A stretch of DNA of 63,175 nt, counting the filler, from Guillardia theta CCMP2712 (lineage: Eukaryota; Protista; Cryptophyta), in assembly GCF_000315625.1 (NCBI RefSeq). It is 4 parts of 4 records of this genome, joined end to end, with 100 filler letters (N's around TTAATTAATTAA, not from the genome) between each part and the next. Parts side by side here need not be neighbours in the genome. Positions count along the whole stretch, not along the records: positions 24,364 to 44,350 come from NW_005434618.1; 3 more parts are not named here. One strand, 5' to 3'. Positions 24,320 to 44,538 of the stretch are shown one piece after another. The notes beneath the pieces are model-generated. The model was not told the origin of the DNA and did not search any database. It worked only from the letters and a program-made list of their open reading frames with translations. Position 1 is the first letter of the stretch; every line of letters starts with the position of its first letter. A program made the position numbers and the translations under genes.

Positions 24320-24427
24320 NNNNNNNNNNNNNNNNNNNNNNNNNNNNNNNNNNNNNNNNNNNNCTCTCCCTCCCTCCCTCTTTCCCTCCTCTCCTTCTGA
24401 CTTCTTCTTCCTCTTCCTCTTCCTCAG

Positions 24428-25691
24428 GTTTCGGGACTCACGTCGAACTCTGGAAGGACGCGCTCAGCGAGCGAGCCACATCCCCGTACATGACCCATCA
24501 CACCAAGGCGAAGCAGTCGCTTGCTTGTCCTCCTCCAGCTGACCTTGAGCAGGGCATGCGAGTCAAGGACGTCTACTTCCGCCCCTTCGAAGACGTCCTC
24601 GGCATCTCTCACTCCCACGGCTTCAGCAGCATCTTGGTGCTCCTCCTCCTGCTCCTGCTCCTCCTCCCCCTCCCCCTCCTCCCCCTCCTCTCCTCCTCTC
24701 CTCCTCCTCTCCTCCTCCTCCTCCTCCTCCTCTCCTCGTCCTCCTCCTCCTCCTCCTCCCTCCCTCCCTCCTCCTCCTCCTCGTCCTCCTTGCCGTCTCT
24801 GAGCTGATCATGGTGAAGGTCCCTGGCTCAGGAGAGCCTAACTTCGACTCCTTCGAGGCTAATCCGTTCCAAAACAAGAAGCAGAGACGAGAAGCAGAGG
24901 TGAGAGAGGAGAGGAGGCGAAGGCTGAGACGAGGCCAGGAGAAGTACAGAGCAAGGGATGAGGCGGAGGAGAGGAGTGAAAAGAGGGAGGAGAGGAGGAG
25001 AGGAGGAGAGGAGGAGAGGAGGGAGGAGGAGAGGAGGGAGGAGGAGAGGAGGGAGGAGGAGAGGAGGAGAGGAGGAGAGGAGGAGAGGAGGAGAGGAGGG
25101 AGGAGGAGTGGAGGAGAGGAGGGAGGAGGAGAGGAGGAGAGGAGGAGAGGAGGAGAGGAGGGAGGAGGAGAGGAGGAGAGGAGGGAGGGAGCGTTCAGCT
25201 ACTGATGTGAAGCAGATTCATGCGTTGCTGGAGAAGTTGGATCCCGACATGATTTCGCTCAACCCCAACTTCATCGGCAACGTCGACACTTACGGTGAGG
25301 AGCGATGGGGAGCTGACAGCCCGTCTCACTCTGCACAGACAAGGACGTGATAGCGGAGGAGAGGAGACTAGCAAGAGAGGAGAACCTGACTGAGCGCCAG
25401 CGACAGAAGAAGGAGAAGCGACATGCCAGGTGCTGCTGACGCCTCCCCTGCTCGCGAAGCTGACGGTGAGAGTGAAGGGGGAGGGATCGAGCAGGCAAGC
25501 GATACAAGAAGAAACAGTTCAACGTGATCGAGGAGCGGAAGGAAGACGCGAGGAGGTGAAGGCACTTTCTCTTCAAACCCCTGGATGTGACGCACCGCAG
25601 GCACATTGCGGGCAAGAAGGAGGACAAGGAGGACAAGGAGGACAAGGAGCCGGTCGGGGTGCTCGATCGTTTTCGCGTTAAGCTTGACTAG
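24428..25691 (+). CDS. WDR46: WDR46/UTP7 (BING4) C-terminal exons; the N-terminus is lost at a gap
   Basis: [69 protein letters not shown] (BING4CT), ending [11 protein letters not shown]. Confidence 0.9.
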
Positions 25692-25832
25692 TCTTGTACA
25701 ATATGTGAATAGAAGCATTTGCTTACATGCTCATTTGCTTATATGCTCATTTGCTTATATTTACACACACACACGCTCTTCTCGGCTGCTCGCAAGCCTC
25801 AAGAAAGTCTGGCACGGTCATGATCCAAGGGC

Positions 25833-27134
25833 TCAAACGGCCTCGGACTCCTGCATGGCAGAGAGCTGCTTGTTGAGGTCGGCGATCTGCTTCATCGTCG
25901 ACGAGATCTCCTGGTCCTTCTCGTGCACTTGCTCGTCCATCTCCCGGCTGTCGGGCAGCCTCCTCCCATCGTCATGGTGGTCCCAGCGAGGGTTCATGTA
26001 GTCTCCTTCCGCCCTCTTCCCCTTGCTCGGACGCATGAAATCTCCGTCCTCTGAATACTCCATGCGGCTCTCTCGCGTCTTCGACGGTCGGATCTGAGGG
26101 ACGACGTCACGATACCTGACGCTCTTGAGCTCATCGAGCCAGACGTCTCGCTTGTCCACCCCCAGCTGGAACTTGAGCAGGGCGAAGCCGTACACAGACT
26201 TGGCGGCGACGTCCATGATGACAGTCATCACGTGGGCTGCCAGCTGGGAGATGGCTCCGAACTCGGTGAGAAGCCAGAGGGCCGGGTAGCCGCACCAGAT
26301 GCTGAAGTAGAGGGTGAGGGAGAGCTTGAGAGGCGCTCGGATCTTCTTCGCGTCCTCGTTGAGAAACTGCTGGAACCGCGCGTAGACGAGGCGGATGATG
26401 CTGATCCACGTGAAGGCAAAGATGAAGCAGCCGAACATGAACCAGAGGTACCGCGCGGGAGGCTCGAACGCGTTGCNNNNNNNNNNNNNNNNNNNNNNNN
26501 NNNNNNNNNNNNNNNNNNNNNNNNNNNNNNNNNNNNNNNNNNNNNNNNNNNNNNNNNNNNNNNNNNNNNNNNNNNNATGCGATGGTCAATCCGACGAAGA
26601 GAGAGTAGGTGATCTTGTAGGGGAGGTTGAGCGACCACAGCAGATCCAGCGTCTGATGCAAAGGCAAGCACGTCAGTCGCGGCCATCCAGAAGCAGCGAG
26701 GTGAAGCGAGGAGCAGGAGCAAGGAGCAGGAGGAGCAAGGAAGAAGGAAGGAGAGTACATACCAGGATAGGACAGGTGAAGATGTAGTCCAGGTACTTGA
26801 AGTAGTTGACAGACAGAGAAAGGCCCATGTCATTGTTGAAGTGAGCGCAGATACGGCCCCAGTAGGTGATGGCAGCGATGAGGTTGACGTAGATGGAGAG
26901 GCACTTCTCTTCCCGGTAGCCGACGAAGAACTCTTGGTCGCCATCGGGGCCCTTGAACGACATGAGCTTGTACATGAGGGCGAGAGAGGCACCAAGAAGA
27001 CAAAGAAATCCCAGCCAATCAACTCCGATCACGGTCGGGTCGTGAAGATTGAAGTTTGGAAGGCGAGGATTGTTCCATCCTCCCATGCCATATTGCCAGT
27101 TGGGATCGGAGAGTGAAGGGGCAGACGTCGTCAT
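25833..27134 (-). CDS. CCR4: Bacteriorhodopsin-like (DTD) cation channelrhodopsin, cryptophyte BCCR family; appears to be GtCCR4
   Basis: Exon 27134-26763, intron 26762-26653, exon 26652-26577, N gap, then 26476-25833. Helix C reads FKYLDYIFTCPILTLDLLW, helix F WCGYPALW, and helix G MDVAAKSVYG with the retinal Lys. Seven hydrophobic segments precede a ~110 aa hydrophilic tail. Confidence 0.93.
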
Positions 27135-27561
27135 TCCCTACTTGAACGTTGTTGAGAGCAATATCGACGTGGTGAGAAGCTGCAGAAAGCAGCAAAGTAA
27201 GTGAAGCAGATGCCATGCTAGAGACGATTGACCTGAATTCCTGCTTCGAGAAGCACAAAGGATATCCGAAGTCACGTCCGGTACTGCTGTTACTCAAGTT
27301 TAGCGACAGCAGCATTCCTGCTCCAAGGCACAGGGTGCGATGTATGCATCGTTGGAACACACAGACGATGGGACATTTCAACATGCAAGAACAGGTGGTG
27401 GAGATGAAATGAGCAGCCAGATATCAGTGCGATCGAGAAGACCACAGCAGCATGAGAGGTGTGTCCAGCTATGAATTTATGTATGTACAATGGACGATCC
27501 TGGGTCAGTCGAATGGGAATTCATACAAACAATGCCTGCAGGAGGGAGAATGAGAGAGGAT

Positions 27562-27716
27562 GAGGAGCAAAAGGACTAGAGCAGCAGGACGGGAGGAGCA
27601 AGAGGACTAGAGCAGCAGGACGGGAGGAGCAAGAGGACTAGAGCAGCAGGACGGGAGGAGCAAGAGGACTAGAGCAGCAGGACGGGAGGAGCAAGAGGAC
27701 TAGAGCAGCAGGACGG
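27562..27716. repeat. 31-bp tandem repeat x5 (GAGGAGCAAGAGGACTAGAGCAGCAGGACGG) upstream of the rhodopsin
   Basis: Near-perfect copies are directly visible. Confidence 0.92.
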
Positions 27717-29107
27717 GAGCGATTCTTTCAGTGCAGGCAGCATTAACGAGGACGCAGCGAGCGGGAGCGGTGAGTCGCAGTGTGTAGAAACAAGAGGGGT
27801 AGGGGGTAGTTCGATATCCATAGGGGGTCCTATGAGAAAGGGGTATAGAGAAGGCCTGGGAGGGGTAGGGGGTGGATTTGTTTTTGGTCCCTTGGTACGG
27901 GGTAGGGTGATCTAGCTGATCTTCCATCGGGCTGCCGTCATGTCGGGGATCATGGACATAGAAGGGGTGGGGTAGGGCAAGTAGGTGCAGATGGTATCAG
28001 GGGGGGTAGGGGTTGTTTTTTGTTGGGTCATCATCTTACGTGGGGTCGTGATGGTGTTTCGTAGGGCCGGCGGCTCGACAACAAGGGTAGGGTGGTTAGA
28101 TGGGATTAGAAGGGGTAGGGGTTCATGGATGACTCCAGCAAGGGTGGGGGTACATGCATAACCCTAGGGATGTTGAACAGACCAGGACATGACACGAAGA
28201 TAGGGGTAGGGGGGTTGAGTTACTAGATGCTCGAAGGGGGTAGGGTGTAGAGAACCGATGAGGCGTGTAGAGGAGGGGTGGGTCAATCAATAAAATGCAT
28301 TGTACAGCCGAGGAACAAACCCCTCAAGGGGGTGGGTTAGGAGTTGACCGAGGGAGGGGTGTCTTCCTCTACTATCATGGGCCACCTGCACCACCTCTTT
28401 TAGGCTTGGCAGTTGCGAAAGATTCCCCTACCCTACCCACTGGGCCCCATACCAACTAGATGGGGGTACCCCACCCCACCCCCGTTCATCAGGCTGAGCC
28501 AGGGGACGCAGCGGCCTGTCGCGCTTGTTCCCAGGAGGCTTTTGAAGTTTACTCGCCATAAAACCATTAAGGCCCTACCCCTACCCCACCCCTCTCTCTA
28601 CCCTTTCCTACCCCTCCATAGTTTCAGTTGTCTCAGTGTCCCCTTTGCCCCCATTACTCGATACGGCCCAACCACCCACCCCTCTTCCTTCTGCAGGCCC
28701 TACCAGCACTTAGTACTTAACTTTGAGTAAAACTTTGCGGCCTCCCAACATTATTACTCATCACCCGGCCGGCCACTCGCCGAGTCGGAGCTTCAAGTCA
28801 GGCGGGGCCCCGGCCTCTACTCCAGCCATTGTCCTCGTACTACGGTACTGATTTTTAACTTAACATTGACTGAGTGAAGCATTTTACGTTGACAGTGATC
28901 CTTCACTGGAAGTTATCAAGACAGATGCGGGCTTCCGAAGTTCTCTCCGAAGTTCAAGTTCGGCGAGAAGCGAAAAGAAAGAGAGCCTTGAAGGTACTCA
29001 TCAGTTAACTAGTAAACTTTTCAGTGGAGGCCCGGCCCCGTGGCGGCATCCGAGTGACTCCAAAGTTGTCCTCGTACTGATTTTTAACTTAACTTTGAGT
29101 AAAGACT

Positions 29108-30455
29108 GATGGAACGTATGCCAGCCGTGCCAGTCAGATAGCGCCGAGTTAACAAAAACTCTCCTGTAAACCAAGACGACTTACGTGGCAGGCGGCCAAT
29201 GTAGCGTATGGGACGAAGAGGGGGTCTTTCCTAGCCGTCTTGCTAAGGTCCTCTCATGTCTGGATGCTTGGGTCTCACATCCTAGCATACAGTCTATCTC
29301 TCATGTGCTCCTCAATTCTGGTTTTGTGTGCATTAAACTCGGTCTTGAGCAAAAACTGTCTTGTTACCAACGAAGGTCGATGTGATGTCTGCGTGACTTT
29401 GGACTAGTACAAGTCTAACAAACTTGTATTCAGTCGGTTATGGGCCGCAAGTTGCTTAGGCCTCTCATCCCAGCCTCAATTTGTTTGATTGATCTTCGAA
29501 TAGGAAAAACAAGCCTTTCCCCAGCCAGATTGGTCGGTCGAATATCTGCTTAACCGTGTGGAAACGCACTTGAAGCTGATTCGATTCTTATTTTCTTGAT
29601 CTTTGAGTAGGATCACATGGAACTACCAGGAGATCTGGCGGAAGTTTCATGTCATGGAGCTAGGCTGTGGCATGCATAACTGGAGCTACTTCTGGATCGG
29701 CGAACAAGGTACAACTGCAAATTATCTTCAGATGCCTTGAAACGGATGTTCCAATCTCGCGGCAGCAATCTCTGGTCACAAGTTCTTTACGGTTCAAAAA
29801 TTTATCTTTTGGTCTTCAAATGCTGGCGAGCAAACTTCTCTCGTCTTCTCTTTTATTTTCTCTCTTCTCAGACACTCTTATCTTTACTCTATCTCTCTTC
29901 ATTGCATCCGCTCGCTATGCATCTCCTTTATCTCTTTACTGCACATCTAATAGCCCTGCATGAAAATCTTCTTCAGAATGGACAATCCTTGAATGGTTAT
30001 TGCCCACTCAGCATGACTGTGAACTTGAAGTTGTATCATCGTATCTTGACTTGGATCTGCTGACATTCTTGTTTGTGTGACTTTCTGCCGTCCGATGTAA
30101 CGTACTATTTCAGAAACTCGGGGGGAGGATGGAACGTATGCCAGCCGTGCCAGTCAGATAGCGCCGAGTTAACAAAAACTCTCCTGTAAACCAAGACGAC
30201 TTACGTGGCAGGCGGCCAATGTAGCGTATGGGACGAAGAGGGGGTCTTTCCTAGCCGTCTTGCTAAGGTCCTCTCATGTCTGGATGCTTGGGTCTCACAT
30301 CCTAGCATACAGTCTATCTCTCATGTGCTCCTCAATTCTGGTTTTGTGTGCATTAAACTCGGTCTTGAGCAAAAACTGTCTTGTTACCAACGAAGGTCGA
30401 TGTGATGTCTGCGTGACTTTGGACTAGTACAAGTCTAACAAACTTGTATTCCGTC
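29108..30455 (+). mobile_element. Non-autonomous TRIM-like LTR element (328-bp LTRs, ~690-bp non-coding core)
   Basis: LTRs at 29108-29435 and 30128-30455 are identical except for one base. Copia-type PBS GGTTATGGGCC at 29436-29446, [11 protein letters not shown] before the 3' LTR, and a flanking duplication AAAGACT. Confidence 0.92.
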
Positions 30456-31031
30456 AAAGACTCCAAGGAGGTGCAGCCTGAGGAGCAGGAAGTACCGTAC
30501 CGGGCCGGCGGCGCGGCTCATCAAGTTAAAGAGACCGGCCGCGCGTCCGACTGGCACGGCCCAGTATTCTTGCAGTGCCCCGCGGCCCAGAACGGAGCTT
30601 CAGTTTGCCAAGCGGGTATCACTGACGGTCACCCGTGAGTTTTGGGGGCCGCTGTGTTTAAGGGTCTGTCATGTCTCCTGTCGCCGTATGGCCTGTGCGA
30701 CAGTAGTGTCAGAACGGTCAAGCCTCCCAGGCTCTACCGTACTCTCCTGATTGTCCTCGTTATGATTTAACTGGCTTTGACTAAAGTAGCTTGTGCCTCA
30801 CCGATCCGATCGGAGGCCGCAGAATGCCGCAGGAACGGTCAACTTCTATAGTCAGACTGATCGGATAGCACGGGCGAGACATCGCTAGTATCTTTAATCA
30901 ATGTGGTGCGAACTGATTTCCATCAAGCGTCCAAACCCGAACCGTGTGACTGATTTCAAGTTTCTTGCTCAATCAGTAAAGTTGCGTCATCAAGACTCTA
31001 TGCCGGGGCAAGTTTGGCTTCAGGATCGCCT

Positions 31032-32144
31032 TTAGGGTCCATCCTGCAGCTGCGTCGCGGCTTCTGCGTCCTTGGCTTCAGTCCATGCTTTCCAGAGCAA
31101 CGACTTCTCAAGCAGGCGGACTTCCATCTCCTTCACTTGATAGTAACTCGGTAGCAATCTGATGTTCTCGATGCAGTCACGGAGGTTGTGCGCTTTGCTC
31201 GTGACTCCTGCACTGAGGGCGAGGTCGACATGAAGAAAGTGGACATGCAGGTGCCAGAAAGTTGGAAGGTAGTGTATGTGAACGATAAGTTTGTCTGGGG
31301 TAACGCCATACTTCTCCAGTATGGCACCGCAGCCTTGGTGGTATATGTTCTGAAGCAAGTCGAGGTTCTCGTCGTTCAGTGAACGTAGACACACCAAGTC
31401 TTTCCGGTTCACAATGGCGAGGCAGTATAAGTTAGAAACGTTGGTCTGGTCCCATTTCAAATCTGGGAGTAGCACAAACCCGTCTCGAGGATCATTGTTA
31501 TGGTAGATAATTCTCTCCTGCTCCGCAGATCCATCCAAAATGTTGTGAACCCATTGTATCCGACGGCCTCTCTCGTTCTCCTCTACGAATGGAAGGACGA
31601 CATTCTTGTAGATGTCCACGGTCTCCCACAAGACATGTATCTCATCCTTTCGATACTTGTTGATTTGTTGATCAGTGGCAGGGAAGATAGTGTCACACTT
31701 GATTGCATTGAGAGCAGGAGGTACTTGTAGGTTGTAGACGCAGTACTCAGCGTTCTGGAAGTCAAGCTTGTACTCGGCTCCGGCATTGGGTGCTAGCATT
31801 CTTTTCACGTCTTCGACATCGAAGGGTTTTTTCTCTAGGAGAACGACAGCCTTGCCCTCCTTACCCGGGATCCTAGCTTGCACAGCTATCCACTTCCTCC
31901 AAGGACTTACATCCAGCACTTCCTCCACCTCCAGCCCCTGCATGCCTGCTCCCACGCCTACGACTGCTTCCCGGCAACCAGATTGAAACCCACCCTACCC
32001 CTCCAAATAAAATTTCCTTCAACACCCCTGTATTTCCCTTTCAAATCACCCCACCATCTACGGTATTTCTCAGCCCCAGACCTCTCCACCCCCTTTATCT
32101 GTACCTTCAACACACGCCAGGTCCGCCTCGATGTTTTCCCTCAT
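31032..32144 (-). CDS. DCPS: m7GpppX diphosphatase (scavenger decapping enzyme)
   Basis: AVVLLEKKPF, TIFPATDQQINKY, QWVHNILDG..EQERII, GFVLLPDLKWD, HIT motif HYLPTFWHLHVHF. A short first exon at 32144-32105 is inferred. Confidence 0.93.
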
Positions 32145-32787
32145 AGTTCTTGTAACGATATGTAACGCATTTTGAAACGATGGTAACGGGCAATTCGACA
32201 CCTGTCCTGGGCTTGCAATGCAATCGAGGATACAAATGGGCGAGGAAGGGAGGGTAGGCGCGAAGACCATGCTCGTACACGACAGAATCAGGGCATCAAG
32301 CATGCACATATGATTGAGGGAGCAAGGGGAGAGGATAGAGAAGGGGAGGGAGGGAGTGGGGAGGGGGAGAGGAGTTGCGTAAAGACGAGGTAATTGTATG
32401 TAGAGGCAAGAGTCAGCTACCAGCAGGCAAGTTGGAAACAGTGAAGGAACGAGAGAAGTAGTCCCTTCAGAGGAGCGTTATATGAAAGAAGTCGAAAGGA
32501 GGTGCGGAGAAGGTCAGGCAACCATTCAAATGAGGGAAGAATCCTTGGTTATGAGATTCAGAGCTTCTGTTTCATTAGTTCTCCGAGTGTGTGATGTATA
32601 TGAAAGGGAGAATGTTACGTACAGGTTCAGTAGATAGTGTTGATAAGAGGTGCTGTTTTTTTATGCACTTCATGTGAAACCTTTCACTTTCAAACTGTTT
32701 CGGACGGTTTCGTGGTCCAAACTGGAAGATAGAATTTGACTTATCTTGGTTTCTTGTGTTGTCAGGCGTTGATCGAAACTCTTTGGG

Positions 32788-33602
32788 ATGGGAGACTCTG
32801 ACTACAGTTTCTCTCTCACTACCTTCTCTCCATCTGGCAAGTTGGTACAGATTGAGTATGCCTTGAATGCGGTGGCGGCGGGTAGCACCTCGCTCGGGAT
32901 TAAAGGTGAGACCAACGTTGCTTCATGTTCTTTCCTGCGATAATCGTTTGACTTTGGTTCCAGCAACAAATGGGGTTGTTGTAGCGACAGAGAAGAAGGT
33001 TAGTTCTCCTCTAGTGGATGAATCAATGGTGAAGAAGATTGCGGAGATCGACAATCACATTGGAATGGTTTATTCGGGAATGGGACCTGACTCTAGAGTG
33101 CTTGTGGCCAAGGCACGGAAAATTGCGCAGAAATACATGTTGACATATGGTGAACCGATCCCCACCAACCAGCTGGTGAGAGAGATCGCGTCGGTGATGC
33201 AGGAATTCACGCAGTCGGGAGGAGTTCGACCCTTCGGAGTCTCCCTACTCATCATCGGGTCGGACGACAAGGGCCCGATGCTGTATCAGGTCGACCCTTC
33301 TGGCTCTTACTGGCCATGGAAGGCTTGCGCCATCGGCAAGAACATGGTCAACGCAAAGACGTGAGTGAAGAAGAGGTTGTTCTGTGATGAGTGACCGTTT
33401 GTACATCAGTTTCTTGGAGAAGAGGTATAACGATGATATCGAACTGGAAGACGCGATACATACAGCTATCCTAACGCTCAAAGAAGGCTTCGAAGGCCAG
33501 ATCTCTGAGAACAACATCGAAATCGGAATTGTAAATGACCAGAAGAAGTTTCGCGTCCTTACGGCAGCTGAGATCCTCGATTACCTCGGGGAAGTAGAGT
33601 GA
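32788..33602 (+). CDS. PSMA2: 20S proteasome subunit alpha type 2
   Basis: [56 protein letters not shown]...[18 protein letters not shown]. Two short introns. Divergent from DCPS. Confidence 0.97.
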
Positions 33603-33801
33603 GAGGTGGCGTTGCTTGATGGGAGGACGAATTGGATGATAAAATTCAGTCAAACACAGGCTCTGCATTCTCCTTCTCCTCCTGCCGCTTCTCCTCTTGC
33701 TTGTCGTGATCCTCAAACTCTTCCTGGCCAGTTCCCAGCACGGATTGCAAGTTGGAATCGAGCTGGCCAAGTGACTGCATCAACGTACTGAAGGAGCTTT
33801 C

Positions 33802-36800
33802 TCAGTCTCTCGTTCTGGTTCCTTCTCTTGTCTCAGCTCCCTCGTCCTCTGTGCTGCAAGCAGCTCGATCTTCTTCCTTCTCGTCGTGTTCTGTCGCTGC
33901 CTTCAGTTTCACACTCGATGCCACGTCGTCGTTCTCTTCCTCTTCCTCTTCCTCGTCCTCGTCCTCGTCCTCGTCCTCTGACTCCCCTCTGTCTTCTTCG
34001 TCCCCCTTGTCGCCTCGTGTCCTTCTGTCGTAGATGTACTTGCACCACTTGTGGAAGGCTCTGCCCTCAGGCGACGAGAAGCGGCTGGTCTTGGGCCCGA
34101 GGCTGCTCGTGGGGACGTCGCAGGTCTCCTTGCGGAGGCTCTTCCACACGGAGAAGCAGAGCGCGACTTGGTCAGCCCACAAGTTGCAGAGGAGCGACTG
34201 CCCCTGCTCCCTCATCCTCCTCTGCTCCTGCGCCGCCTCCTTCCACCTGCTGAAGGAGGCGATGGAGCGCCGGAGGGTGAGGAGGCGGTTGATCTTGAGC
34301 TGAGCGGAGCGGCGGGAGAATCTGGTGCTGATGCTGACTGTGAGCATGGAGTCGAGAGCGAGCATGGCCGGGATGGAGTGGCCGACCCGCTGGATCTTGC
34401 AGAGGGCGTTGACGGCAGCTCTGTGAGGAGAGTCAAGAGAGGAGGAAGGGAAGCGAGAGGATGCGGGAGACTGGGGTGAGAGGAGGGAACTACAGCTCGA
34501 GAGAAGCCAAGGAAGGGAGGGAGCCGGGGAGGGAGGGAGGGGAGGGGAGAGATCTTACTTCAGGTAGGCGAGTTTTGGAATCTTGAGAGAGGCAGCGCTT
34601 CTTAGCCTCCTGGCTCCTTGTCATCCTCCATTCACACCCTCCCAGCCCTCTCGCCCTTCTCCTCCTCGCATTACCGGAGCGCGAAGACAGCCTTGGCTAG
34701 AGTGAAGGAGGCGGAGAAGGCGTCAACCTGGGCTGGTGGTGAGCAGCGGGAGGAGAGGGGGAGGCAGAGTCACGTCGCCGAGCAGCATGCCGTTCTGACG
34801 CATGGAGGAGATCTGACTAGGACATGGGGCGAAGGAGGATTCCTGCAGCGAGTCGACGGAGATCTTGGCGAACACCTTGAAGGGCCTGAGGAGGAGGAAG
34901 AGGGTGAGGCTGAGACAGGAGAAGCCAAGAGGGAGGGGGGGGGGATGGATGAGAATGTGGACAGGAGGAGGGAGGAGGGAGGGAGGAGGGAGAAGCTTAC
35001 CTTGCTCGATCGTTCCCTTCCTCCTGCTCCGCGAGGGTCTCGAGGATGTCGCGGATGTCGGAGAGGAGGGAGATCCGCTCGGAGTCAGGGAGGCAGGTGC
35101 CGGTGAAGGACAGCTTCAGTCCTACTGCGAACTTCTCGTGCTGACTCCTCTTGCACCTCCTCTCCCACGCGTCCAGCACATCCAAGGACGTCGTCTTCCT
35201 CAGCGTGCTGAACTTCTTGCTTTCGATGGTCTCCTTGTTGGACACCCACACGCACGTCTCCTGCTCGTATCGCTGCGCGATGTTGATGTAGCGAGCAAAG
35301 AGCAGCTTCTTCTCCTGCACCAGCCCCATGAAGGTCGCCCGCCTCCTCATCCTCATCTCCTCCTCCGAGTAGATGTCTCCGTCCTGCAACGTGAGCTGCT
35401 TCTCGTCATCAAGGCTCCTCAGACTCTCTTGGCTCCTCTCCCTCTCTGACTCGCTCAAGGCTCCCGCCATCTCCTCCTCCTCCTCCGAAGACGAGGACGA
35501 GGACGAGGACGAGGACGAGTCGTCCATTGCAGGAGCAGCGTCTGCCTTGGCATCGGGAATGACGATCTGAGAGCCCGAGGAGGGGGGGGGAGCAGCTCCT
35601 TCTCCCTCCGCTAGCTCCCAGGTGATCTCCGGGAACCTCTCGAAGAGGAGGAGGAGGAGATTCTTCGCCCTCGTGTAGAACTGCGGCCCCGCTCCCTCCT
35701 CCGCCACCTGACGCTGCGACTTCCCCGAGCCCTTCCTGCTCAACTTTCTGCTCCTCAGTTTCGGTCTGCCTCCTCCTCCTCCTCCTCCTCTTGTTCCTGT
35801 TCCTTCTCCTCCTCCCCTTGTTCCTGCTCCCGCTCCCGCATTTGCTCCTGCTCCTCTTTTCTTCACTTTCGTTTCTCCTGCTCTCTCTGCTACTCTCTCT
35901 CGCTCTGAGCTGACGTGCTTAAATCTGCTCCCGAGGGTCTTCTGGAAGACTTCTTCCAGGGAGTCTCGAGCTGGCGGCTCGTGCTCGTAGATGGAGCTAA
36001 GGAAAGAGCTGTAGGCGGAGACGACGGCAGGAGTGATGGAGGACCGAAAGCTCTTGTGTTGGAAGAGCGCGTCGACCTCTTCAACCATCCTCATCTCCTC
36101 CATGGCAGCGTGACAGTCTTGATGCTCCGCTAGCGCAGCTCCCAGCTCCATGCTTTCCTTCAACGTCCTCCCCGCTCCTCCCTTGAGCCGCCTGCTCTTC
36201 TCCTCCACGCAGCTCTGCATGATGAGGAGGAGGGTCTGCAGGAGACCTCGCGCGAGCATCTTGTGCCGCAGCTGCTTGAAGTCGGCGCAGCAGGAGAGCG
36301 CGAAGAGCGAGTCTGTCGGGTGATGCCTGAGCCTCTCGAGGAAGAAGCGGAGGAGAGGACGTGCGAGCTGCGAGTGCGGAGAGAGGAGGAGCGAGCGAGT
36401 CTCCTTGCAGCGTAGGGAGGAAGTGAAGACAGCAGCAGCGCCGCGCGAGACTTCGGGAGAGGAGGAGAGGAGGAGGCAACTGAGTCGCTTGAAGACGCCG
36501 AGCTCGAGCAGAGGCTGATGGAACTGCTTGAGTCTGGAGAGAGGAAGGAGGACCCCTGCCACCACCTGCCGCTCCACCTCCTGATGCTCCTCGAGCTCGC
36601 AGGCACAAAGGATGTCAGCGATGGTGCGGAGGTTCTCGAGAAGGAGGAAGAGGGAGGAGCGGGACCAGGACCGGATCGCCTCCTCCCTCTCCCTCCCTGT
36701 CAGGACGCGATCATGGAGGATGGGAACGTGGTTGGCGTAGGCGTCCTGGTAGCGTTTGAGGTGCTCGGCGAAGTCGGGATGGATCTGACTGAAGATGGCG

Positions 36801-38219
36801 AGGTCGCAGCGCGAGAGCTCCAGGAGCTGGCAGGGGCTCATGGCGATGGCGGTGGAGGGACGCGGGTCGCTGAGGAAGAGGTGGGAGACGCCGAAGCTGT
36901 CCTGAGGGCCGAGAATGGCGATCTCCTGCGATGAGGTGAGGGATCAGTGGAGGAGGAGCGGAGGAGGAGCAGAGGAGGACGAGCAAGATGTAGTGGAGGA
37001 GGAGCAAGAGGAGCAAGAGGACGTCGAGGAGGAAGAGGAGGAGGAGGAGGAGGAGGAGGAGGAGGAGGAGGAGCAAGAGGAGGAGGAGGAGCAAGAGGAG
37101 GAGGAGGAGGTGATGGTGGTGGGGCAGGAGGAGGAGGAGGAGGATGGATTTTCTTGCTAACCTTCATCTCGCTGCTGTCCTTCTTAGACACGAGGACTCT
37201 GACGTGGCCGGACAGGATGATAAAGCAGGAGGTCGCTCGCTCCCCTGACGCACGATCACCGCCTCCTCCTCCACCTCATGGAACGCGGCGAGTTTGAGCA
37301 GCTGCAAGCAGCCCTCCTGACTCATCCACTTGAAGGGTCTGCTCTCCCCGGCCTTCCCCAGCACCTCCATGCCCTGCTGCTGCTGCTGCTGCGGGATGAG
37401 AAGGCTGCCGAGCCTGAGGGAGTGGAGGAGGACGGACGAGAGGCAGAGGAGGCTCCTGCGCGTGACCTCCTCCTTGTACGGGGAGGAGGGAGGGAGAAGG
37501 CAGGAGAGCAGGACGTCTGGGAAGTGGAAGGTGAGGAGGAGGTCGAGGGACATGCTGTGAATTGTCTTGATCCTCTCACTGCTGTTCGCCCCGGTGATGA
37601 TGCAGAACCCCTCCAGCAGCATGCTCAGCGTCTGACTCTCCGCCCGCTGCTCCTCCCTCCTCCTCTTCGTCACGCTGAGATCGTCCCCTTGAAGCTTGCT
37701 GGCCAGCTGCTGCATCAGACGGAGGACTTCGACGATCCCGTTGGAGGAGGAAGAGGAGGAGGAGAGGGAGGAGGAGGAAGAGAGCTTCATGTTGTGTCCC
37801 CGAAGGCTGGACCACATGACCTGCCGCTTGTCTGCAGCAGTCGAGAGGTCGCGGAAGAGACGAGCAGCTCTTAGAGAGCACTCAAGGTCTCCCCCTCCGA
37901 TGAACTTTGACAGGCCTGTGAGGATGCTATCTGAAAACCTCTCGTTGCTCTCCACCTGCCCTCTCAGTGTCAGACCTCCTCCTCCTCCTCCTCCTCCTCC
38001 TCCTCCTCCCCCTCGCTCTCTGTCGACTTGCCTGCGAGTGGAGGAGGGCGGCTGAGAGCAGCTGGAGGGCTTCGAGCCTCACGGAGGAGGAGGAGGAGGA
38101 GGAGCATCTGACTGTCAGTCGGAGACCCTCCGAGTTGATGAACTCCTTGCTCGCATCGCTGCTTGCTCGCACCAGCTCCTCCAACGCCCTCAGACAGTCA
38201 ACCTGCGCCCCGTCAGCCC

Positions 38220-38267
<48 letters not shown>

Positions 38268-41200
38268 CTGCCTTCGCTCTTCTTTCTCTTTCTCCTCTTG
38301 CATCTCCACCTCCTGCTTGTCCTCCTCGTCCCCCTCCCTCTCTCTTGCCTGTATCGATGGCTTTGTGTGCGGGTTGGCAAAAAGTTCGACGAGCGGCTGA
38401 ATGCCACAAGACCCCATGAGGATCTGCAGGAGGTTCAGGACAAGGAGGGAGAAAGCAGGGATGACGAGGAGGAGGAGGAGGAGGAGGAGGAGGAAGAGGA
38501 GGAAGAGGAGGANNNNNNNNNNNNNNNNNNNNNNNNNNNNNNNNNNNNNNNNNNNNNNNNNNNNNNNNNNNNNNNNNNNNNNNNNNNNNNNNNNNNNNNN
38601 NNNNNNNNNNNNAGGGTGATGACAAGGATGATCATGCTACTTATCATGTTGATGACCGTGATGGTGATGGTGGAGACGATGAAGCTCAACTACTCCATCA
38701 TGATCATCGTCGTCTTCTGCTCCCTCCTCCTCTTCCTCGTCCTCCTCTTCTTCCCCGGGTCATGCTCACCATCCTCCTACACCATGAGCAGCACCATCAA
38801 GAGGAGGGAGGCGGCGGAGGTGGAGGAGGAGGAGGAGGAGGAGGAGGCTCTAAGGGCAGAGAGCGGAGGAGCTGAGGTCATCAAAGGATCTCACGGAAGG
38901 GTTGATCTGAGCGATGGCTGCTAGAGCAGGAGAAGCTTCTTTCTGCAGCTCAAGACAAGAACCATCGACTGCAATGTCGAGAAGCAAGTCGAGAGTCTCG
39001 TTACTCGTCCTGTACAGCTTTCAGCGTCTCCTGTTCCTCCTTCTCTCCCTCCTCCTGTTCCTCTTCCTCGTCCTCCTTCTTCTACTCCCCCTCCCCTCCT
39101 CCTGTTTCTCGCTTCATCCTCGTCCTCGCCTCGTCCTCGTTCTTTGCTTCCCCTTCCCCTCCACAAGCTTCACCGGCTTTCACACAAGTTGATTCCTGAG
39201 CGAGGAGACTTGGATGGCTTGCAGGAGGAGGGAGGGCGAGGAGTGAGCGGAGGATGCGCATGCTTCTCCTCCATGACCCATCGCGCTCCTCGCGAGGACA
39301 GAAGTCTCTTCCTGCTCCACCCGGTGAGTCTCTTGATAGCGAAAGCTGAAGGGAGAGAAGAGAAGGGGGAGGACGAGGGGGAGGAGAGGAGAGGAGAGGA
39401 GAGGAGAGGAGAGGAGAGGAGAGGAGAGGAGAGGAGAGGAGAGGAGAGGAGAGGAGAGGAGAGGAGAAGGGCTCGTTACCGATGCAGACGAGGAAGGTAA
39501 TTCCACATGTTGCTCAAGCTTTAAGGCCTTTTTCTTCTCTTGTGCCGCCTGATCCGCAAGACACCATCACTATCCTCCTCCTGCCCCTCTCCCTCCTCCT
39601 CCTTCTCAGTTCCCCCTCGGCCTTGTCTTCTTCCTCCCTCACTCTCTCTCACCCTGAAGATCCGGTTCTGCTGGTTTTGGATGAGACTGAAAACCAGGCA
39701 GAATGAGAAGACAGTGGCGGAAGAGGAGGAGAAGGACACGAAGGAGAAGGAAGAGGATGGGAACAGGAGGAGGAAGAGGATGGGAACAGGAGGAGGAAGA
39801 AGACACAAGGAGGAAGACGATGAAAGAAGAGGATGGGAACAGGAGGAGGAAGAAGACACAAGGAGGAAGACGATGAAAGAAGAGGATGGGAAGAGGAGGA
39901 GGAAGAAGACACAAGGAGGAAGACGATGAAAGAAGAGGATGGGAATAAGAGGAGGAGGATTGTCTCATGGTTTACCCCCTGACAGCCTTGGCAAATGAAG
40001 ATGTCTCCATGCTGAGCGGAGAAGTAAGATCCAGTCAGGAAGCAGGCAGATGACAGTGAGAGTCAAGAGGAAGAGGAAGAGGAAGAGGAAGAGGAAGAGG
40101 AAGGGAAGAGGAAGGGAAGAGGAAGGCGGGGAGGAGGGAGGAGAGGGGAGGAAGGAGGATGAGGGGAAGGGATGGATGGACTGACTTGACTCGGATGATG
40201 ATTCTTCCCTGCTGCTGCACCTTCTCCTCGCTCCTCGACATCCTGCAGGCAGCCCAGCTCAGCCCCAGCAGGTGTCAAGGAGGTTCCTCCCACCTGGGCT
40301 TCTCCACCTCGAGCTCTGCCTCGAAAGCTCCTCTGGCCTCGGACTCCTGCACAGACGTCAGCTGGTCCTTGTCCCCAGCTCCTGCCCAGGTGTTGCCTCA
40401 ACGATCGTCTGCAATGTTGTTTCTAACTTGCCGATCGTCACATTCAGCCGCGCAGTCTCCTTGTCCGAAGTTATGTCTGCCTGACGTCAATCCCTGTACC
40501 CTCCCCTCCCTCCTGCCCCTGCCCCTTCCTCTCCTTCTCGTTTCGCCACCTTCCCTCTCCCTGCTCTCTCCCTCTCCCCTCTCCTCACCCCCCCCCCCCC
40601 CACTCGCTTTCGCTCTCTCTCTCCTTTTCTTCCTCCTCCTCGTTCCTCACCAGGGTTGTCAAACACGCAGAACTTGAGCGGCTGCGACTTGTCTGGCCCG
40701 TGATATCGGATCCTCATCACCTTCTGGAACTTGGGGCAGGAGCTCTCCGTAACCCTCTCAGTCCGGAAGGCCTGCGAGCATGTCGTCATGATGATGAAGA
40801 GCGATCCTGCTGCTGCTGCTGCTGCTGCTTGTCCTGCTCCTGCTCCTGCTCTTCCTCCTGCTCTTCCTCCTCCTCTTCCTCCTCCTCTTCCTCCTCCTCC
40901 TCGTACTTCTTTCCATAGGTCGTTCTTATCGAAGATCAAGTCAGGATGCTTGTACACCACGCAGATCGGGTCGACGCAGATGGCTCGCGGCAGCAGCGGG
41001 AGGTCCTCGCAGGCGATGGAGAGCTCGATCACCTTGCTCACGTCCTTCTTCGGCACCTTCAACCCGCTCCGGTTGAACTGAACGTTGAGAGATTCGGTGG
41101 CAAGAATGTCAGTCAGGTCGTACTTCCCCCGCACAGCGTTGTGCAGCCTCGTCTCGTTCTTGAGGAGCGCGAGCACGTTCCTGTTCTCCAGCTCCTCTGC

Positions 41201-41401
41201 ATGCAGCAGGAAGGTGTTGTCGTGCATGCCGGACGTGTACTGCTCGTAGATGGGCTGACTGCTGAGACTTCTCCAGGTCTTCCTCGAGCCCTCCATGCTC
41301 GCAGGCTCAACGGAGGCGACGCGAGGGGAGAGGAAGGAGGTGTCGGCATGAAGCAGCTCGTAGAAGTTGGAAGGCTTCCCTGTCCTCCTCCTCCTCAACA
41401 T
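33802..41401 (-). CDS. Large multi-exon protein: copine-like C2 domain, ARM/HEAT repeats and Sfi1-like W-containing C-terminal repeats (could be two genes)
   Basis: IELSIACEDL...DPICVVY...WKE.FRTERVTESSCPKFQKVMRIRY...QPLKFCVFD...IGKLETTLQTIV (C2). LLELGVFKRLSCLLLSSSPEVSRGAAAVF (ARM-like). SFSRWKEA, CFSVWKSL, RAFHKWCKY. The exon chain continues through microsatellite introns. Confidence 0.6.
39700..39950. repeat. Degenerate ~50-bp purine-rich tandem repeat inside an intron
   Basis: Recurrent GAAGAGGATGGGAACAGGAGGAGGAAGAAGACACAAGGAGGAAGACGATGAAA units. Confidence 0.7.
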
Positions 41402-41773
41402 CCTACCCCCCTACGTCTACCGGCATGTGGACATTTACTGATTCACGACCGTTGAACAAAAGGTCAAAAAAAACGTCAAGGTACAACCGGCCGTCAAACT
41501 TTCTACAGGCTCACTGTCAGAGCAGAAGGAACAGGCCGACTACCCGAGAGATTACGGCAGGTCCTCAGACGTGGCCGCGACCTTGTCCGATCTATCACCT
41601 GACTGTCTACAATTCACTCAGTTGTGAACGAGTGTCCGTAGTCAGGCATGTATAGAGCAAAGTTGAGTTAGAACGGGCCTGGAGGTCGAATCGTTCCAGC
41701 AAGTATGTGACGGTATAAAGGATAATTCATAGAGATCTCATCGACTTCCTACACTCATTTCTCCATCACACTC

Positions 41774-44033
41774 CTATGGTACATCTCTCAACATCGTCCA
41801 CGCCCATCTGTCGTCATTGCTCAAGGCGAGGCAGAGTACCTGAAGGACCTGGCGGCTCCCTGAGGGTTCAGATCGACCTGACGGATTCGTTACACTTCTT
41901 AGCAAGGAAGGAGAGGACGAACACCTCAGACAGCCCGGGATCACTTCGATCTGCACCGAGCGGCTGGAAAGAAGGCTTCACCTGAACCTGCAATGGACAT
42001 CATTCGCAGAAGCGCCTCGATATAGAAATGTTGTCACTTCGGTCTGAGAGGGGAAGATGGTGAAGGCGGCCGGCAGATCATCGTCGAGCTGAAGCTGAAT
42101 AGAAGGGAGGAACTCCTTGTTGTGCCGGACGAGGAGATTGTCATCCTGCAACAAGAAATCGATCAGTCCAGACGTGAAGGATCACCAGAAAGAAAGAGAG
42201 AGGAAGGGAGGGAGGGAGGAAGGGGAGGGGGGAGAGAGAGGGAGGGGAGGGAGGGAGGGAGGGAGGGCAGTAGATCTCATGATTGACAAGCCATCATGAG
42301 GAAACAGCTTTTTTGATGTTTGTTTTACCAAGGACGGGGTTCGCAAGACTTGACTCTCCTTTGAGATCTTTCAGAGTCATGAGTCGTAAGTCGAAATTTC
42401 CACAAGACAATCTCTTACGATTCCAGGGGAAGCCAAGTACAGGGCCTTGTCCTGCACGTAATGACTCGAATCTTGACACTTGAAATGATTCAGTACCTGA
42501 CGGTGGGGGATGGTAAAGTCCAAGTTCTTCTTTGCAGTCCCATACTTTTGACTCCTCCTGAACTCAGAGTTGAACTCAAACTGCATCAGGTTCTGCTGGT
42601 ATATGAGGGCGTCAACTTCAAGCATCGACAGCCCATTGTCGGTCCTCGTTGGACTACTGCGGATCTGCCGACTCGTGTCAGCCGCAAAGAAGCCTCCAGG
42701 AGGAGAACGTGCCATGTCGAGCTCGAGGTTGTGACTGTGCTCGAGTCGTCGGACTGCCACCATGAAGCATCAGCAGCGTGTTTGTCACTTGGTCGACTCC
42801 TTCGACATCACCAGCAGTTTCGATCATCTTCGTCTCTGCTATCAGGTACTCGTCCACTCGCTGCAAGGGCATGTCATCCATCAGGCTTCGCGCATTCGAC
42901 GTCATACCTGGAGGGCCATGCTCACTTGCACAGCCTCCTGCAGCCTCCGCTCTAGCTGCTTCTTCTCTGCAGGGCAGCTCACAGCTGGGTCATGCGCAGA
43001 CTTCATCACCTTCTTCCGCCAGCTGCAAGGCTGCGTTGAGCTGAGAAGAGTATGCGTCATCAACGACGTCTGCAGGTCAGAGCAGCCTAACCCGCTCGCA
43101 TTCTGCCGTATGAAGCTCGTCCATGAGAGCGATCTGATTCACGTAGCTCTGCCATGCGCGTGAGGGCTGGCGGCATGCCGGCATCAACCTCCACCTCCTT
43201 GATGTTCTCCAGCAGGCTTTTCTCCCTCTCATGCTTCAGGATCTGGTCAGCAGGTCAGCTAGAGAGTGGCCGACCAGTCCCCATCGCCCTACGTGCTCGC
43301 TCGAAGACTTCTCTTGGAGCTGCGAAACACAGTGACCGGGGTTCACGTTGCATGCAGCATGATCACCTGCTGGAGCCGTTCTTCGTAGTCCCTCTGCAAC
43401 AGCAAACTCAGTGCGGTCAAACGACAGGGAGGACTTGATACTTTGGTCTCCTGAAGCAGGTTGAAGTAGAGGGAGGCAAGCTGCTGCTGCTGCTCGCTTC
43501 CTTTCCCTCCGCCATATCCACCGCCATCGCCGTATAGCTGCAAGCGGGTTGACTGGAAGGCTTCTTCTAGTTGAGGGTCAAGGACCTGGTGGTTGTGCTG
43601 AGATACCAGGCGCTTCAGCTCCTTCAGTTCCATCCTAGCACATGCTCAGACTCCTTGTCAAGACTGTTGGATGCTGACTTGACGATCTCGAGGGCTTGCA
43701 CCAACCAGACATCCATCTGCGCCTTAGAATCAGTCGAGCTCTCACTGACAGCAAGCAGACCTGCTCTCCCCCCGTCACCTTCTCTTCCATGGACATCACG
43801 AAGGACAGCAGCCTCATGATTGCGTCATCGACGGGCTCGCTACTTCTTCCTCGGTCGTTGTTGGTGCTCGCCTTCAACCCGATGCTCGTCTCTGATTCGA
43901 CAGCTTGGACATAGAATGTTCGTGCTGACTCATCGGCAAAATCTCTTGTCCTTTCACTCCCGTGCGGTTCTTGTTCTTGTTTGTCGAAGGCACTGAGATT
44001 GAGCAGCCCTTGCAGCCCTCGTGTGAAATCCAT
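41774..44033 (-). CDS. Multi-exon hypothetical protein with a central coiled coil
   Basis: Chain of minus-strand ORF pieces separated by ~45-60 nt GT-AG introns. No family recognised. Confidence 0.5.
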
Positions 44034-44538
44034 CGCCTCCTCTCCGATTCCCCTCAGTCGGAAGTCGCGCACATCTACTCAGAAACGAGGACACGTCAAC
44101 TCCCAAACTTTGATTGCCTTACCGGCTCAGATAAGTAGTCTCTAGGACTTGGAGTGCTTCCTTCTCCTGGACTGACGTTCTCTTTGTCTCCCTGTCCTCA
44201 ACTGTGCTTCTCTCCTGCTGCTGCTGCTGCTCCTTCACCTCCTCCTCCTTCACCACCACCACCACCACCACCACCACCACCACCACCACCACCACCACCT
44301 CCTCCTCCTCCTCCTCCTCCTCCTCCTCCTCCTCCTCCTCCTTGTCCTCCNNNNNNNNNNNNNNNNNNNNNNNNNNNNNNNNNNNNNNNNNNNNTTAATT
44401 AATTAANNNNNNNNNNNNNNNNNNNNNNNNNNNNNNNNNNNNNNNNNNNNGGAGGGGAGGGGAAGAGACGATGAAAGGAAGCAAAAGCGAGGACAGGACA
44501 GGATATGACAGGAGGCGGGGAGAGGTAGCAGTACCGAC

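What the first reader, a model, noticed from the sequence alone, without database searches (positions are those of the whole stretch)
25833..27134. Pump-like (DTD) rhodopsin that is predicted to be a light-gated cation channel
Seen: after splicing, helix C reads NYFKYLDYIFTCPILTLDLL. Aligned to bacteriorhodopsin (WARYADWLFTTPLLLLDL), D85, T89 and D96 are kept, R82 becomes K, W86 becomes Y, and T90 becomes C. Helix G has D212 and K216 equivalents (MDVAAK). There is no chlorophyte-type Glu series within helix B. Known: cryptophyte bacteriorhodopsin-like channelrhodopsins (the GtCCR1-4 and ChRmine class) carry the proton-pump DTD motif yet passively conduct cations, and evolved channel function independently of chlorophyte ChRs. 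The protein matches my memory of GtCCR4, a highly light-sensitive optogenetic tool. An automated pipeline would probably call it a bacteriorhodopsin-like pump or break the model at the intron and gap.
Basis: partly seen in the sequence, partly recalled or inferred. Interest (0 to 1): 0.92.

Follow-up and report, generated by a model that had tools for sequence, protein, structure and literature searches.

The report
Known channelrhodopsin gene GtCCR4

Summary
A minus-strand gene at 25833-27134 encodes a type-1 rhodopsin. Splicing out a 110-nt GT..AG intron (26653-26762) gives helix C as NYFKYLDYIFTCPILTLDLL, and helix G has MDVAAK.

The 100-N gap really hides 12 bases. These code for five residues, CGVFC, in frame. 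Two DNA-run contigs, a spliced transcript contig and the solved protein all agree. The filled CDS is 1104 nt and 367 aa, with K113, D116, Y117, T120, C121, D127, D242 and K246.

The protein matches PDB 8YEL, "Cation channel rhodopsin 4" (GtCCR4), at 365 of 367 residues. The window is 100% identical to Guillardia theta CCMP2712 scaffold JH993020.1. The next closest solved chains are GtCCR2 and ChRmine. Archaeal and cyanobacterial pumps score far lower.

Published patch-clamp work on this protein shows passive, inwardly rectifying, Na+-selective photocurrents with very high light sensitivity.

What is added here:
- The RefSeq model XP_005828956.1 ("hypothetical protein") jumps the gap and lacks four TM4 residues.
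- The genome and reads give M237 and S290 where the cryo-EM construct has T and G.
- There is a 53-nt 5'UTR intron and a poly(A) site near 25718.
- A paralogue (probably GtCCR5) is 97-98% identical in DNA, intron included, but has a different tail.

Verdict: already known, low interest.

The parts
27233..27288 (-). 5'UTR exon (minimum extent; true transcription start not determined)
   Evidence: Transcript contig L002 bases 26-81 are 100% identical to this stretch. The first 25 nt of L002 look like an assembler hairpin artefact.
27180..27232 (-). 53-nt intron in the 5'UTR, GT..AG
   Evidence: Absent from L002. On the minus strand the ends read GTCAATCGTC...CTTTCTGCAG.
26763..27179 (-). Exon holding the rest of the 5'UTR and codons 1-124 (ATG at 27134-27132). 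Covers the N-terminal extension, TM1, TM2 and most of TM3. K113 is at 26796-98, D116 at 26787-89, T120 at 26775-77.
   Evidence: Translation. Identical to 8YEL_A residues 27-149. 100% identical to L002.
26653..26762 (-). 110-nt phase-0 intron, GTATGT...CATCAG, containing a GGAGCA-rich low-complexity run
   Evidence: Spliced out in L002. Retained in the DNA contigs of X3 and X11.
26577..26652 (-). First part of the last exon: residues 125-149 (TLDLL...GLTIA) plus the first base of Cys150. D127 is at 26644-46.
   Evidence: Identical to 8YEL_A residues 150-174.
26477..26576 (.). Assembly gap written as 100 N. The real content is 12 bases (minus strand GCGGAGTCTTCT), completing C150-G-V-F-C154 of TM4, in frame.
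   Evidence: Bridging contigs in X3 and X11 (tables 5 and 5c). L002 bases 575-586. 8YEL residues 175-179 read CGVFC. The paralogue locus L001 4606-4617 has the same 12 bases.
25833..26476 (-). Rest of the last exon's coding part: residues 154(2/3)-367 plus the TGA stop. Covers TM5-TM7 and a 100-residue cytoplasmic tail ending in a conserved predicted coiled-coil-like stretch. M237 is at 26226-28, D242 at 26211-13, Schiff-base K246 at 26199-201, S290 at 26067-69.
   Evidence: Identical to 8YEL_A residues 180-392 apart from M237/T and S290/G. Pfam PF01036, E=9.6e-10.
25718..25832 (-). 3'UTR with the poly(A) addition site at about 25718-25722. Contains a 16-nt tandem repeat at 25716-25760.
   Evidence: Raw RNA reads of X24 pile up on this strand, with a T-run loose end at 25718 (tables 2 and 7). 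L002 ends at 25722. Tandem repeat.

Best explanation
The gene is GtCCR4 of Guillardia theta CCMP2712, at locus GUITHDRAFT_164280 on scaffold JH993020.1. It is a 367-residue bacteriorhodopsin-like cation channelrhodopsin (BCCR).

The protein binds retinal through K246 in TM7. It keeps the BR proton-pump triad as D116/T120/D127 in TM3 and the second counterion as D242. On green light (about 525-530 nm) it does not pump. Instead it opens a passive, inwardly rectifying pore that carries mainly Na+. In the family, gating is coupled to proton transfers among the pump-type carboxylates. In the alga it most likely depolarises the membrane as a photoreceptor for light-guided behaviour.

Shown here: identity, gene structure, gap content, transcription and polyadenylation. 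Taken from published experiments on the same protein: channel function, ion selectivity and light sensitivity. Inferred: the native physiological role.
For: - Identity. Exon pieces match PDB 8YEL 'Cation channel rhodopsin 4' at 122 of 122 aligned residues in the first coding exon (the start Met is replaced by the construct's tag), 25/25, and 211/213. The filled protein has 367 aa with D116, Y117 and D242, exactly as numbered for GtCCR4 in the literature.
- Source. The window is 100% identical to JH993020.1 of GCA_000315625.1, with the same neighbours.
- Family placement. After GtCCR4, the best solved matches are GtCCR2 (E=2e-14 and 3e-18) and ChRmine (about 1e-10 to 1e-12). Halorhodopsin and archaerhodopsins score only 1e-5 to 1e-7. 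No chlorophyte ChR2, C1C2 or Chrimson chain passes E=1e-3.
- Expression. The spliced transcript contig L002 encodes the full protein. 3'-biased RNA reads with a poly(A) junction appear in run X24.
- Function. PMC10172181 reports photocurrents of GtCCR4 in ND7/23 cells, an I-V curve with inward rectification, an EC50 of 0.025 mW/mm2, and action potentials in neurons. PMC10435232 reports almost no H+ or Ca2+ conductance and high Na+ selectivity. PMC8818676 describes BCCRs as passive cation conductors whose gating is coupled to proton transfers among the BR-type carboxylates.
Against: Nothing found here contradicts it. There are four caveats.

- The genome-encoded protein differs from the solved construct at two residues (M237 against T, S290 against G). 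The native variant as such may not be the one that was measured.
- The original description (Yamauchi 2017) and the structure paper (Tanaka 2024) could not be read here.
- The transcript contig L002 carries paralogue-type letters at two synonymous sites (26457, 26340). It may be a mosaic of the two near-identical paralogues in that stretch.
- The role in the alga's phototaxis is inferred, not shown.
Confidence: 0.97

Rival explanations
1. It is an outward proton pump, as the DTD motif alone would suggest and as a motif-based annotation might state.
For: D85, T89, D96, D212 and K216 equivalents are all present. Archaerhodopsins and other pumps are detectable homologues.
Against: The protein is 99.5% identical to GtCCR4. 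Published recordings show passive photocurrents with an I-V relation, inward rectification and Na+ selectivity. Its closest solved relatives are channels: GtCCR2 and ChRmine.
Confidence: 0.01
2. The locus is a broken or non-functional copy, a pseudogene or mis-assembly. The N gap would hide a frameshift, an extra intron or missing sequence, and the functional GtCCR4 would lie elsewhere.
For: The assembly has 100 N inside TM4. The RefSeq model lacks four residues there. A near-identical paralogue exists.
Against: X3 contig 18 bridges the gap with 12 in-frame bases, with GtCCR4-type letters on both sides (26457, 26340, 26590); a short X11 contig (19 letters on one side) has the same 12 bases. 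The transcript contig with the GtCCR4-specific 5'UTR, T2, G37 and tail has the same 12 bases. The gene is transcribed and polyadenylated. No other copy lies in this piece.
Confidence: 0.01
3. It is the paralogue GtCCR5 rather than GtCCR4.
For: The two 7TM domains differ at only two residues, so helix motifs cannot tell them apart.
Against: The window has T2 and G37 and the GtCCR4-type C-terminal tail, matching 8YEL. The other locus (L001, JH993028.1, XP_005827883.1) has A2, A37 and a tail only partly alignable.
Confidence: 0.01

Closest known systems
GtCCR4 (Guillardia theta cation channelrhodopsin 4; GenBank MF039475; PDB 8YEL; Yamauchi 2017, Shigemura 2019, Hososhima 2023, Tanaka 2024)
   Same: The same gene. 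365 of 367 residues match, numbering of key residues is the same (D116, Y117, D242), and the organism and strain assembly are the same.
   Different: The genome, three runs and an independent transcript contig give M237 and S290, where the cryo-EM construct has T237 and G290. Whether MF039475 itself carries T and G could not be checked.
XP_005828956.1 / GUITHDRAFT_164280, 'hypothetical protein' (RefSeq model of this locus)
   Same: Same locus, and identical over all residues that the assembly shows.
   Different: 363 aa. It skips the N gap and so lacks four residues of TM4 (TIA----CNAF). It carries no functional name.
Paralogue XP_005827883.1 / GUITHDRAFT_164579 on JH993028.1 (probably GtCCR5, XM_005827826 of PMC10172181; the XM/XP link is my inference)
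   Same: The 7TM domain is identical except T2A and G37A. DNA is 97-98% identical across about 1 kb, including the 110-nt intron and the 12 bases at the gap. The C-terminal motif KDQEISSTMKQIA(D/E)LNKQLSA is conserved.
   Different: The middle of the cytoplasmic tail is diverged and the flanking DNA and neighbours are unrelated. The published GtCCR5 has smaller currents and less inactivation.
GtCCR2 and ChRmine (other BCCRs with solved structures)
   Same: Same family. DTD-type TM3 and the best non-self PDB matches.
   Different: Only distantly similar in sequence (bit scores 57-70 against 287-479 for self). ChRmine is red-shifted.
Bacteriorhodopsin and archaerhodopsin proton pumps
   Same: Same fold and the D85/T89/D96/D212/K216 set (Pfam PF01036; PDB hits at E about 1e-6).
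   Different: R82 becomes K113, W86 becomes Y117 and T90 becomes C121. There is a long N-terminal extension and a 100-residue tail. By published measurement it conducts passively and does not pump.

Membership tests
Type-1 (microbial) rhodopsin | Seven-TM Bac_rhodopsin fold with a retinal Schiff-base lysine in TM7 | tested here: met
   PF01036 at E=9.6e-10, 38.7 bits against a 24.6 cut-off, on the C-terminal piece. K246 lies in MDVAAK. Identical to a solved rhodopsin chain.
Bacteriorhodopsin-like cation channelrhodopsins (BCCRs) | Asp-Thr-Asp at the BR 85/89/96 positions of TM3, instead of the E-T-H/K of chlorophyte ChRs | tested here: met
   D116, T120 and D127 after splicing. D116=BR D85 is stated for 8YEL. 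The DTD motif of GtCCRs is stated in PMC10172181.
Bacteriorhodopsin-like cation channelrhodopsins (BCCRs) | Sequence closer to known BCCRs than to pumps, ACRs or chlorophyte CCRs | tested here: met
   PDB ranking runs GtCCR4, then GtCCR2, then ChRmine, all well above halorhodopsin and archaerhodopsins, which rank above GtACR1. No chlorophyte ChR passes E=1e-3. No formal tree was built.
Bacteriorhodopsin-like cation channelrhodopsins (BCCRs) | Absence of the TM2 glutamate series (ChR2 E82/E83/E90/E97/E101) | tested here: met
   TM2 has Glu only at its start (E75, E76). E90 is not conserved in GtCCRs.
Bacteriorhodopsin-like cation channelrhodopsins (BCCRs) | Light-gated passive cation conductance (reversing photocurrent) | not testable with these tools
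   Published for GtCCR4 itself (PMC10172181, PMC10435232, PMC8818676). Not measured for the M237/S290 genomic variant as such.
Bacteriorhodopsin-like cation channelrhodopsins (BCCRs) | Trimeric assembly | not tested
   Reported for ChRmine and related BCCRs (abstract of PMC13078637). No prediction was run, because a solved structure of this protein exists.
GtCCR4 (the specific gene) | Same sequence and same genome locus in G. theta | tested here: met
   365/367 identity to the 8YEL construct. The GtCCR4-specific T2, G37 and tail are present. The window is 100% identical to JH993020.1.

The most novel reading that the evidence does not exclude
The native, genome-encoded GtCCR4 (M237 in TM7, nine residues before the Schiff-base lysine, and S290 in the tail) is not the variant that was solved and used in optogenetics (T237/G290). 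It might therefore differ measurably in kinetics, spectrum or light sensitivity. Separately, the near-identity of the GtCCR4 and GtCCR5 7TM-coding DNA, intron included, next to a diverged tail may reflect ongoing gene conversion between two channel genes whose tails have different cellular roles.
Probability: 0.1. Interest if true: 0.25.

Novelty: already known. Interest (0 to 1): 0.08.

Why it matters
GtCCR4 matters as a highly light-sensitive, Na+-selective optogenetic actuator and as a case of channel function evolving from a pump-like scaffold. All of that is published, so this finding adds only curation-level facts.

- The public genome has an artificial 100-N gap where 12 bases belong.
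- The RefSeq protein therefore lacks four TM4 residues and has no functional name.
- The reference genome encodes M237 and S290 rather than the T and G of the solved construct.

Anyone mining the G. theta proteome for rhodopsins by sequence would get a damaged TM4 for this gene.

Tried and rejected
- Yamauchi 2017 (PMC5468465) and Sineshchekov 2017 (PMC5692563) are not held. The origin of the T237/G290 residues and the primary mechanistic data therefore could not be read. The Tanaka 2024 Mol Cell paper was not among the papers the searches listed.
- Pfam found nothing on exon 1 or on the 25-residue piece alone. These are fragments too short for the model, so this is not evidence against the fold.
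- The first homologue search with the C-terminal piece did not return the locus's own protein. It sits inside the 90% cluster of the paralogue and came out only through the listing of cluster members.
- The runs guessed to be RNA (X1) gave only 3' contigs and no spliced junction. The splice evidence comes from L002 and from the solved protein instead.
- tblastn found no second rhodopsin copy in 24364-44350, and there are no tRNAs.
- No structure prediction, complex prediction or tree was run, because an experimental structure and published trees of this very protein exist.
- I did not align to bacteriorhodopsin directly, because no BR sequence was available by reference. The BR equivalences rest on motif spacing and on the statements read.

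Full report
**What is in the sequence**

The feature lies on the minus strand. Reading 27134 down to 26763 gives 124 codons. They begin MTTSAPSLSDPNWQYG and end NYFKYLDYIFTCPIL. A GT follows at 26762/26761, and an AG at 26654/26653 precedes ACG CTG GAT CTG CTG, which reads TLDLL.

After 25 more codons (…GLTIA) and one base (T), the assembly gap 26477-26576 begins. After the gap come GC and then an open frame of 213 codons (NAFEPPARYLWF…MDVAAK…SAMQESEAV) to a TGA at 25835-25833.

**The gap**

This was the first test asked for. Contigs from two public runs, X3 and X11, still contain the intron and so derive from DNA. They bridge 26476 to 26577 with exactly 12 letters, AGAAGACTCCGC on the + strand (tables 5 and 5c).

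- The X3 contig carries the letters specific to this locus, not the paralogue, on both sides of the gap (26340, 26457 and 26590).
- A 1341-nt JGI transcript contig (L002) has the same 12 letters.
- On the coding strand the join reads A-TGC-GGA-GTC-TTC-TGC-AAC, that is CGVFC. This equals residues 175-179 of PDB chain 8YEL_A.
- The filled CDS is 1104 nt and 367 codons with a single terminal stop.

The two sides are therefore continuous and in frame, and the "100 N" stands for 12 bases.

**Identity**

Against all PDB chain sequences the three pieces match 8YEL_A, "Cation channel rhodopsin 4":

| Piece | Residues of 8YEL_A | Differences | E-value |
|---|---|---|---|
| First exon | 27-149 | none | 1.8e-85 |
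| Second exon, before gap | 150-174 | none | – |
| After gap | 180-392 | two | 1.2e-143 |

The locus fetched through the annotated protein P0012 (XP_005828956.1, GUITHDRAFT_164280) is Guillardia theta CCMP2712 scaffold JH993020.1. It is 100% identical to the window over 10,558 + 2,113 nt, with the N run at the same place. It has the same neighbours: a BING4CT-domain gene, DcpS, and a proteasome alpha subunit.

Native numbering derived from the genomic sequence gives K113, D116, Y117, T120, C121, D127, D242 and K246. A 2026 preprint that analyses 8YEL names Asp116 and Asp242 of GtCCR4 as the equivalents of BR Asp85 and Asp212. It names Tyr117 as the equivalent of BR Trp86. The locus is therefore GtCCR4 itself.

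**Family placement**

After GtCCR4, the best solved matches are GtCCR2 and ChRmine. Halorhodopsin, archaerhodopsins and cyanobacterial pumps come much lower (E from 1e-7 to 1e-4), and GtACR1 is at the edge. No chlorophyte channelrhodopsin passes E=1e-3. Pfam gives Bac_rhodopsin above its cut-off on the C-terminal piece. This agrees with the published description of BCCRs as closer to haloarchaeal pumps than to chlorophyte channelrhodopsins.

**How it works**

This section rests on published work on this protein and family, not on tests made here.

- GtCCRs keep the BR D85/T89/D96 triad but lack ChR2's E90 (PMC10172181).
- GtCCR4 expressed in ND7/23 cells gives photocurrents of about 53 pA/pF at -60 mV with about 20% inactivation and an inwardly rectifying I-V curve.
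- Its action spectrum peaks near 525 nm.
- Its light dependence is biphasic, with a first EC50 of 0.025 mW/mm2.
- It drives action potentials in cortical neurons and light responses in rd1 retina.
- It conducts almost no H+ or Ca2+ under physiological conditions, so it is Na+-selective (PMC10435232; PMC8818676).
- In the family representative GtCCR2, gating is tightly coupled to proton transfers among the residues that define vectorial transport in BR. ChRmine is a trimer.
- The native role as a phototaxis receptor current is an inference stated in that review.

**Transcription**

L002 shows a three-exon transcript:

- a 5'UTR exon (at least 27288-27233);
- a 53-nt GT..AG intron (27232-27180);
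- the exon carrying the ATG;
- the 110-nt intron;
- the last exon, ending at 25722.

Raw RNA reads of run X24 are 3'-biased. They cover 25707-26160 on this strand and show a T-run loose end at 25718, which is the poly(A) site. The first 25 nt of L002 partly repeat, in inverse, the region around the ATG. I take them for an assembly artefact.

**Small additions to what is known**

1. The RefSeq model of the locus (363 aa, "hypothetical protein") joins T|GC across the gap. It lacks four residues of TM4 (TIA----CNAF). That explains why the literature cites GenBank MF039475 for GtCCR4 but XM_ models for GtCCR2, 3 and 5.
2. The genome encodes M237 and S290, whereas the 8YEL construct has T237 and G290.
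   - M237 is supported by contigs of X3 and X11 with no variant called at its codon.
   - S290 is supported by contigs of X1, X3 and X11.
   - The independent JGI protein P0016 has both M237 and S290.
   - M237 is also present in the paralogue and in Hanusia phi.
3. The paralogue XP_005827883.1 on JH993028.1 is probably GtCCR5; the XM/XP link is my inference.
   - It is 98.0% identical over 558 nt, including the intron, and 97.3% over the next 400 nt.
   - It has the same 12 bases at the gap site. It then diverges over about 155 nt of tail-coding DNA and realigns only for the last 74 nt.
   - Its flanks are unrelated.
   - Hanusia phi has a GtCCR4-type tail (P0001). The split of the tails may therefore be older than the near-identity of the 7TM parts, which would point to gene conversion. 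I did not test this.

**Verdict**

Both the observation and the interpretation are correct. The gene is already known, functionally characterised, structurally solved and in use, so the novelty is nil and the interest low. The only practical output is a correction to the public gene model and the two-residue difference from the laboratory construct.

Noticed in passing
window 26477-26576; protein P0012: The RefSeq model of this locus (XP_005828956.1, 'hypothetical protein', 363 aa) treats the N gap as an intron and lacks four TM4 residues. The true fill is 12 bases (CGVFC).
   Followed up: yes
window 26226-26228 and 26067-26069: The genome, the read contigs (X3/X11 at codon 237; X1/X3/X11 at codon 290) and the JGI protein P0016 encode M237 and S290. 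The cryo-EM construct 8YEL has T237 and G290. The origin of the difference is unknown, because MF039475 could not be inspected.
   Followed up: partly
L001:4049-5273 (JH993028.1) against window 25833-27134: The paralogue (probably GtCCR5) is 97-98% identical in DNA across the 7TM-coding part and the intron, but has a diverged tail and unrelated flanks. The pattern suggests gene conversion or a very recent duplication of the gene body only. Reads and contigs of the two copies cross-map, for example at 25878 G>C and 27021-27027.
   Followed up: partly
window 25836-25950 (minus strand; last ~35 residues): The C-terminal motif EKDQEISSTMKQIADLNKQLSAMQ is conserved between GtCCR4, the paralogue, Hanusia and more distant homologues (P0005). 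There is a weak, sub-threshold Syntaxin_2 hit (E=0.007). It may be a coiled-coil for targeting or assembly.
   Followed up: no
window 27562-27719: A perfect 31-nt tandem repeat (5.1 copies, 99% identical) lies about 270 nt upstream of the furthest 5' transcript evidence of the rhodopsin gene, in a purine-rich stretch with strong GC skew. It could be a promoter-region repeat. Its function is unknown.
   Followed up: no
window 29108-29435 and 30128-30455: Two 328-nt direct repeats, 99.7% identical and spaced 1020 nt apart, lie in the ORF-poor region between the rhodopsin and DcpS genes. They could be terminal repeats of a small mobile element or an assembly duplication.
   Followed up: no
window 24810-25690 (+), 24965-25188: The convergent neighbour has a BING4CT (NUC141) domain followed by a long GGAGGAGA repeat coding an E/R/G-rich run. 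Its transcript end abuts the rhodopsin 3'UTR (+ strand RNA reads at 25650-25706).
   Followed up: partly
window 31032-31955 (-), 32867-33364 (+), 38513-38612: A DcpS scavenger decapping enzyme gene and a proteasome alpha-subunit gene are ordinary housekeeping neighbours. A second 100-N assembly gap lies at 38513-38612, inside a region of long ORFs with no Pfam match. The NCBI gene calls of L003 show a 2011-residue product beginning near there.
   Followed up: partly
window 26676-26789: The intron's GGAGCA/GGAAGG low-complexity run attracts very high k-mer depth in DNA runs (15,000 against about 110). It is a genome-wide simple repeat, not a copy-number signal for the gene.
   Followed up: partly
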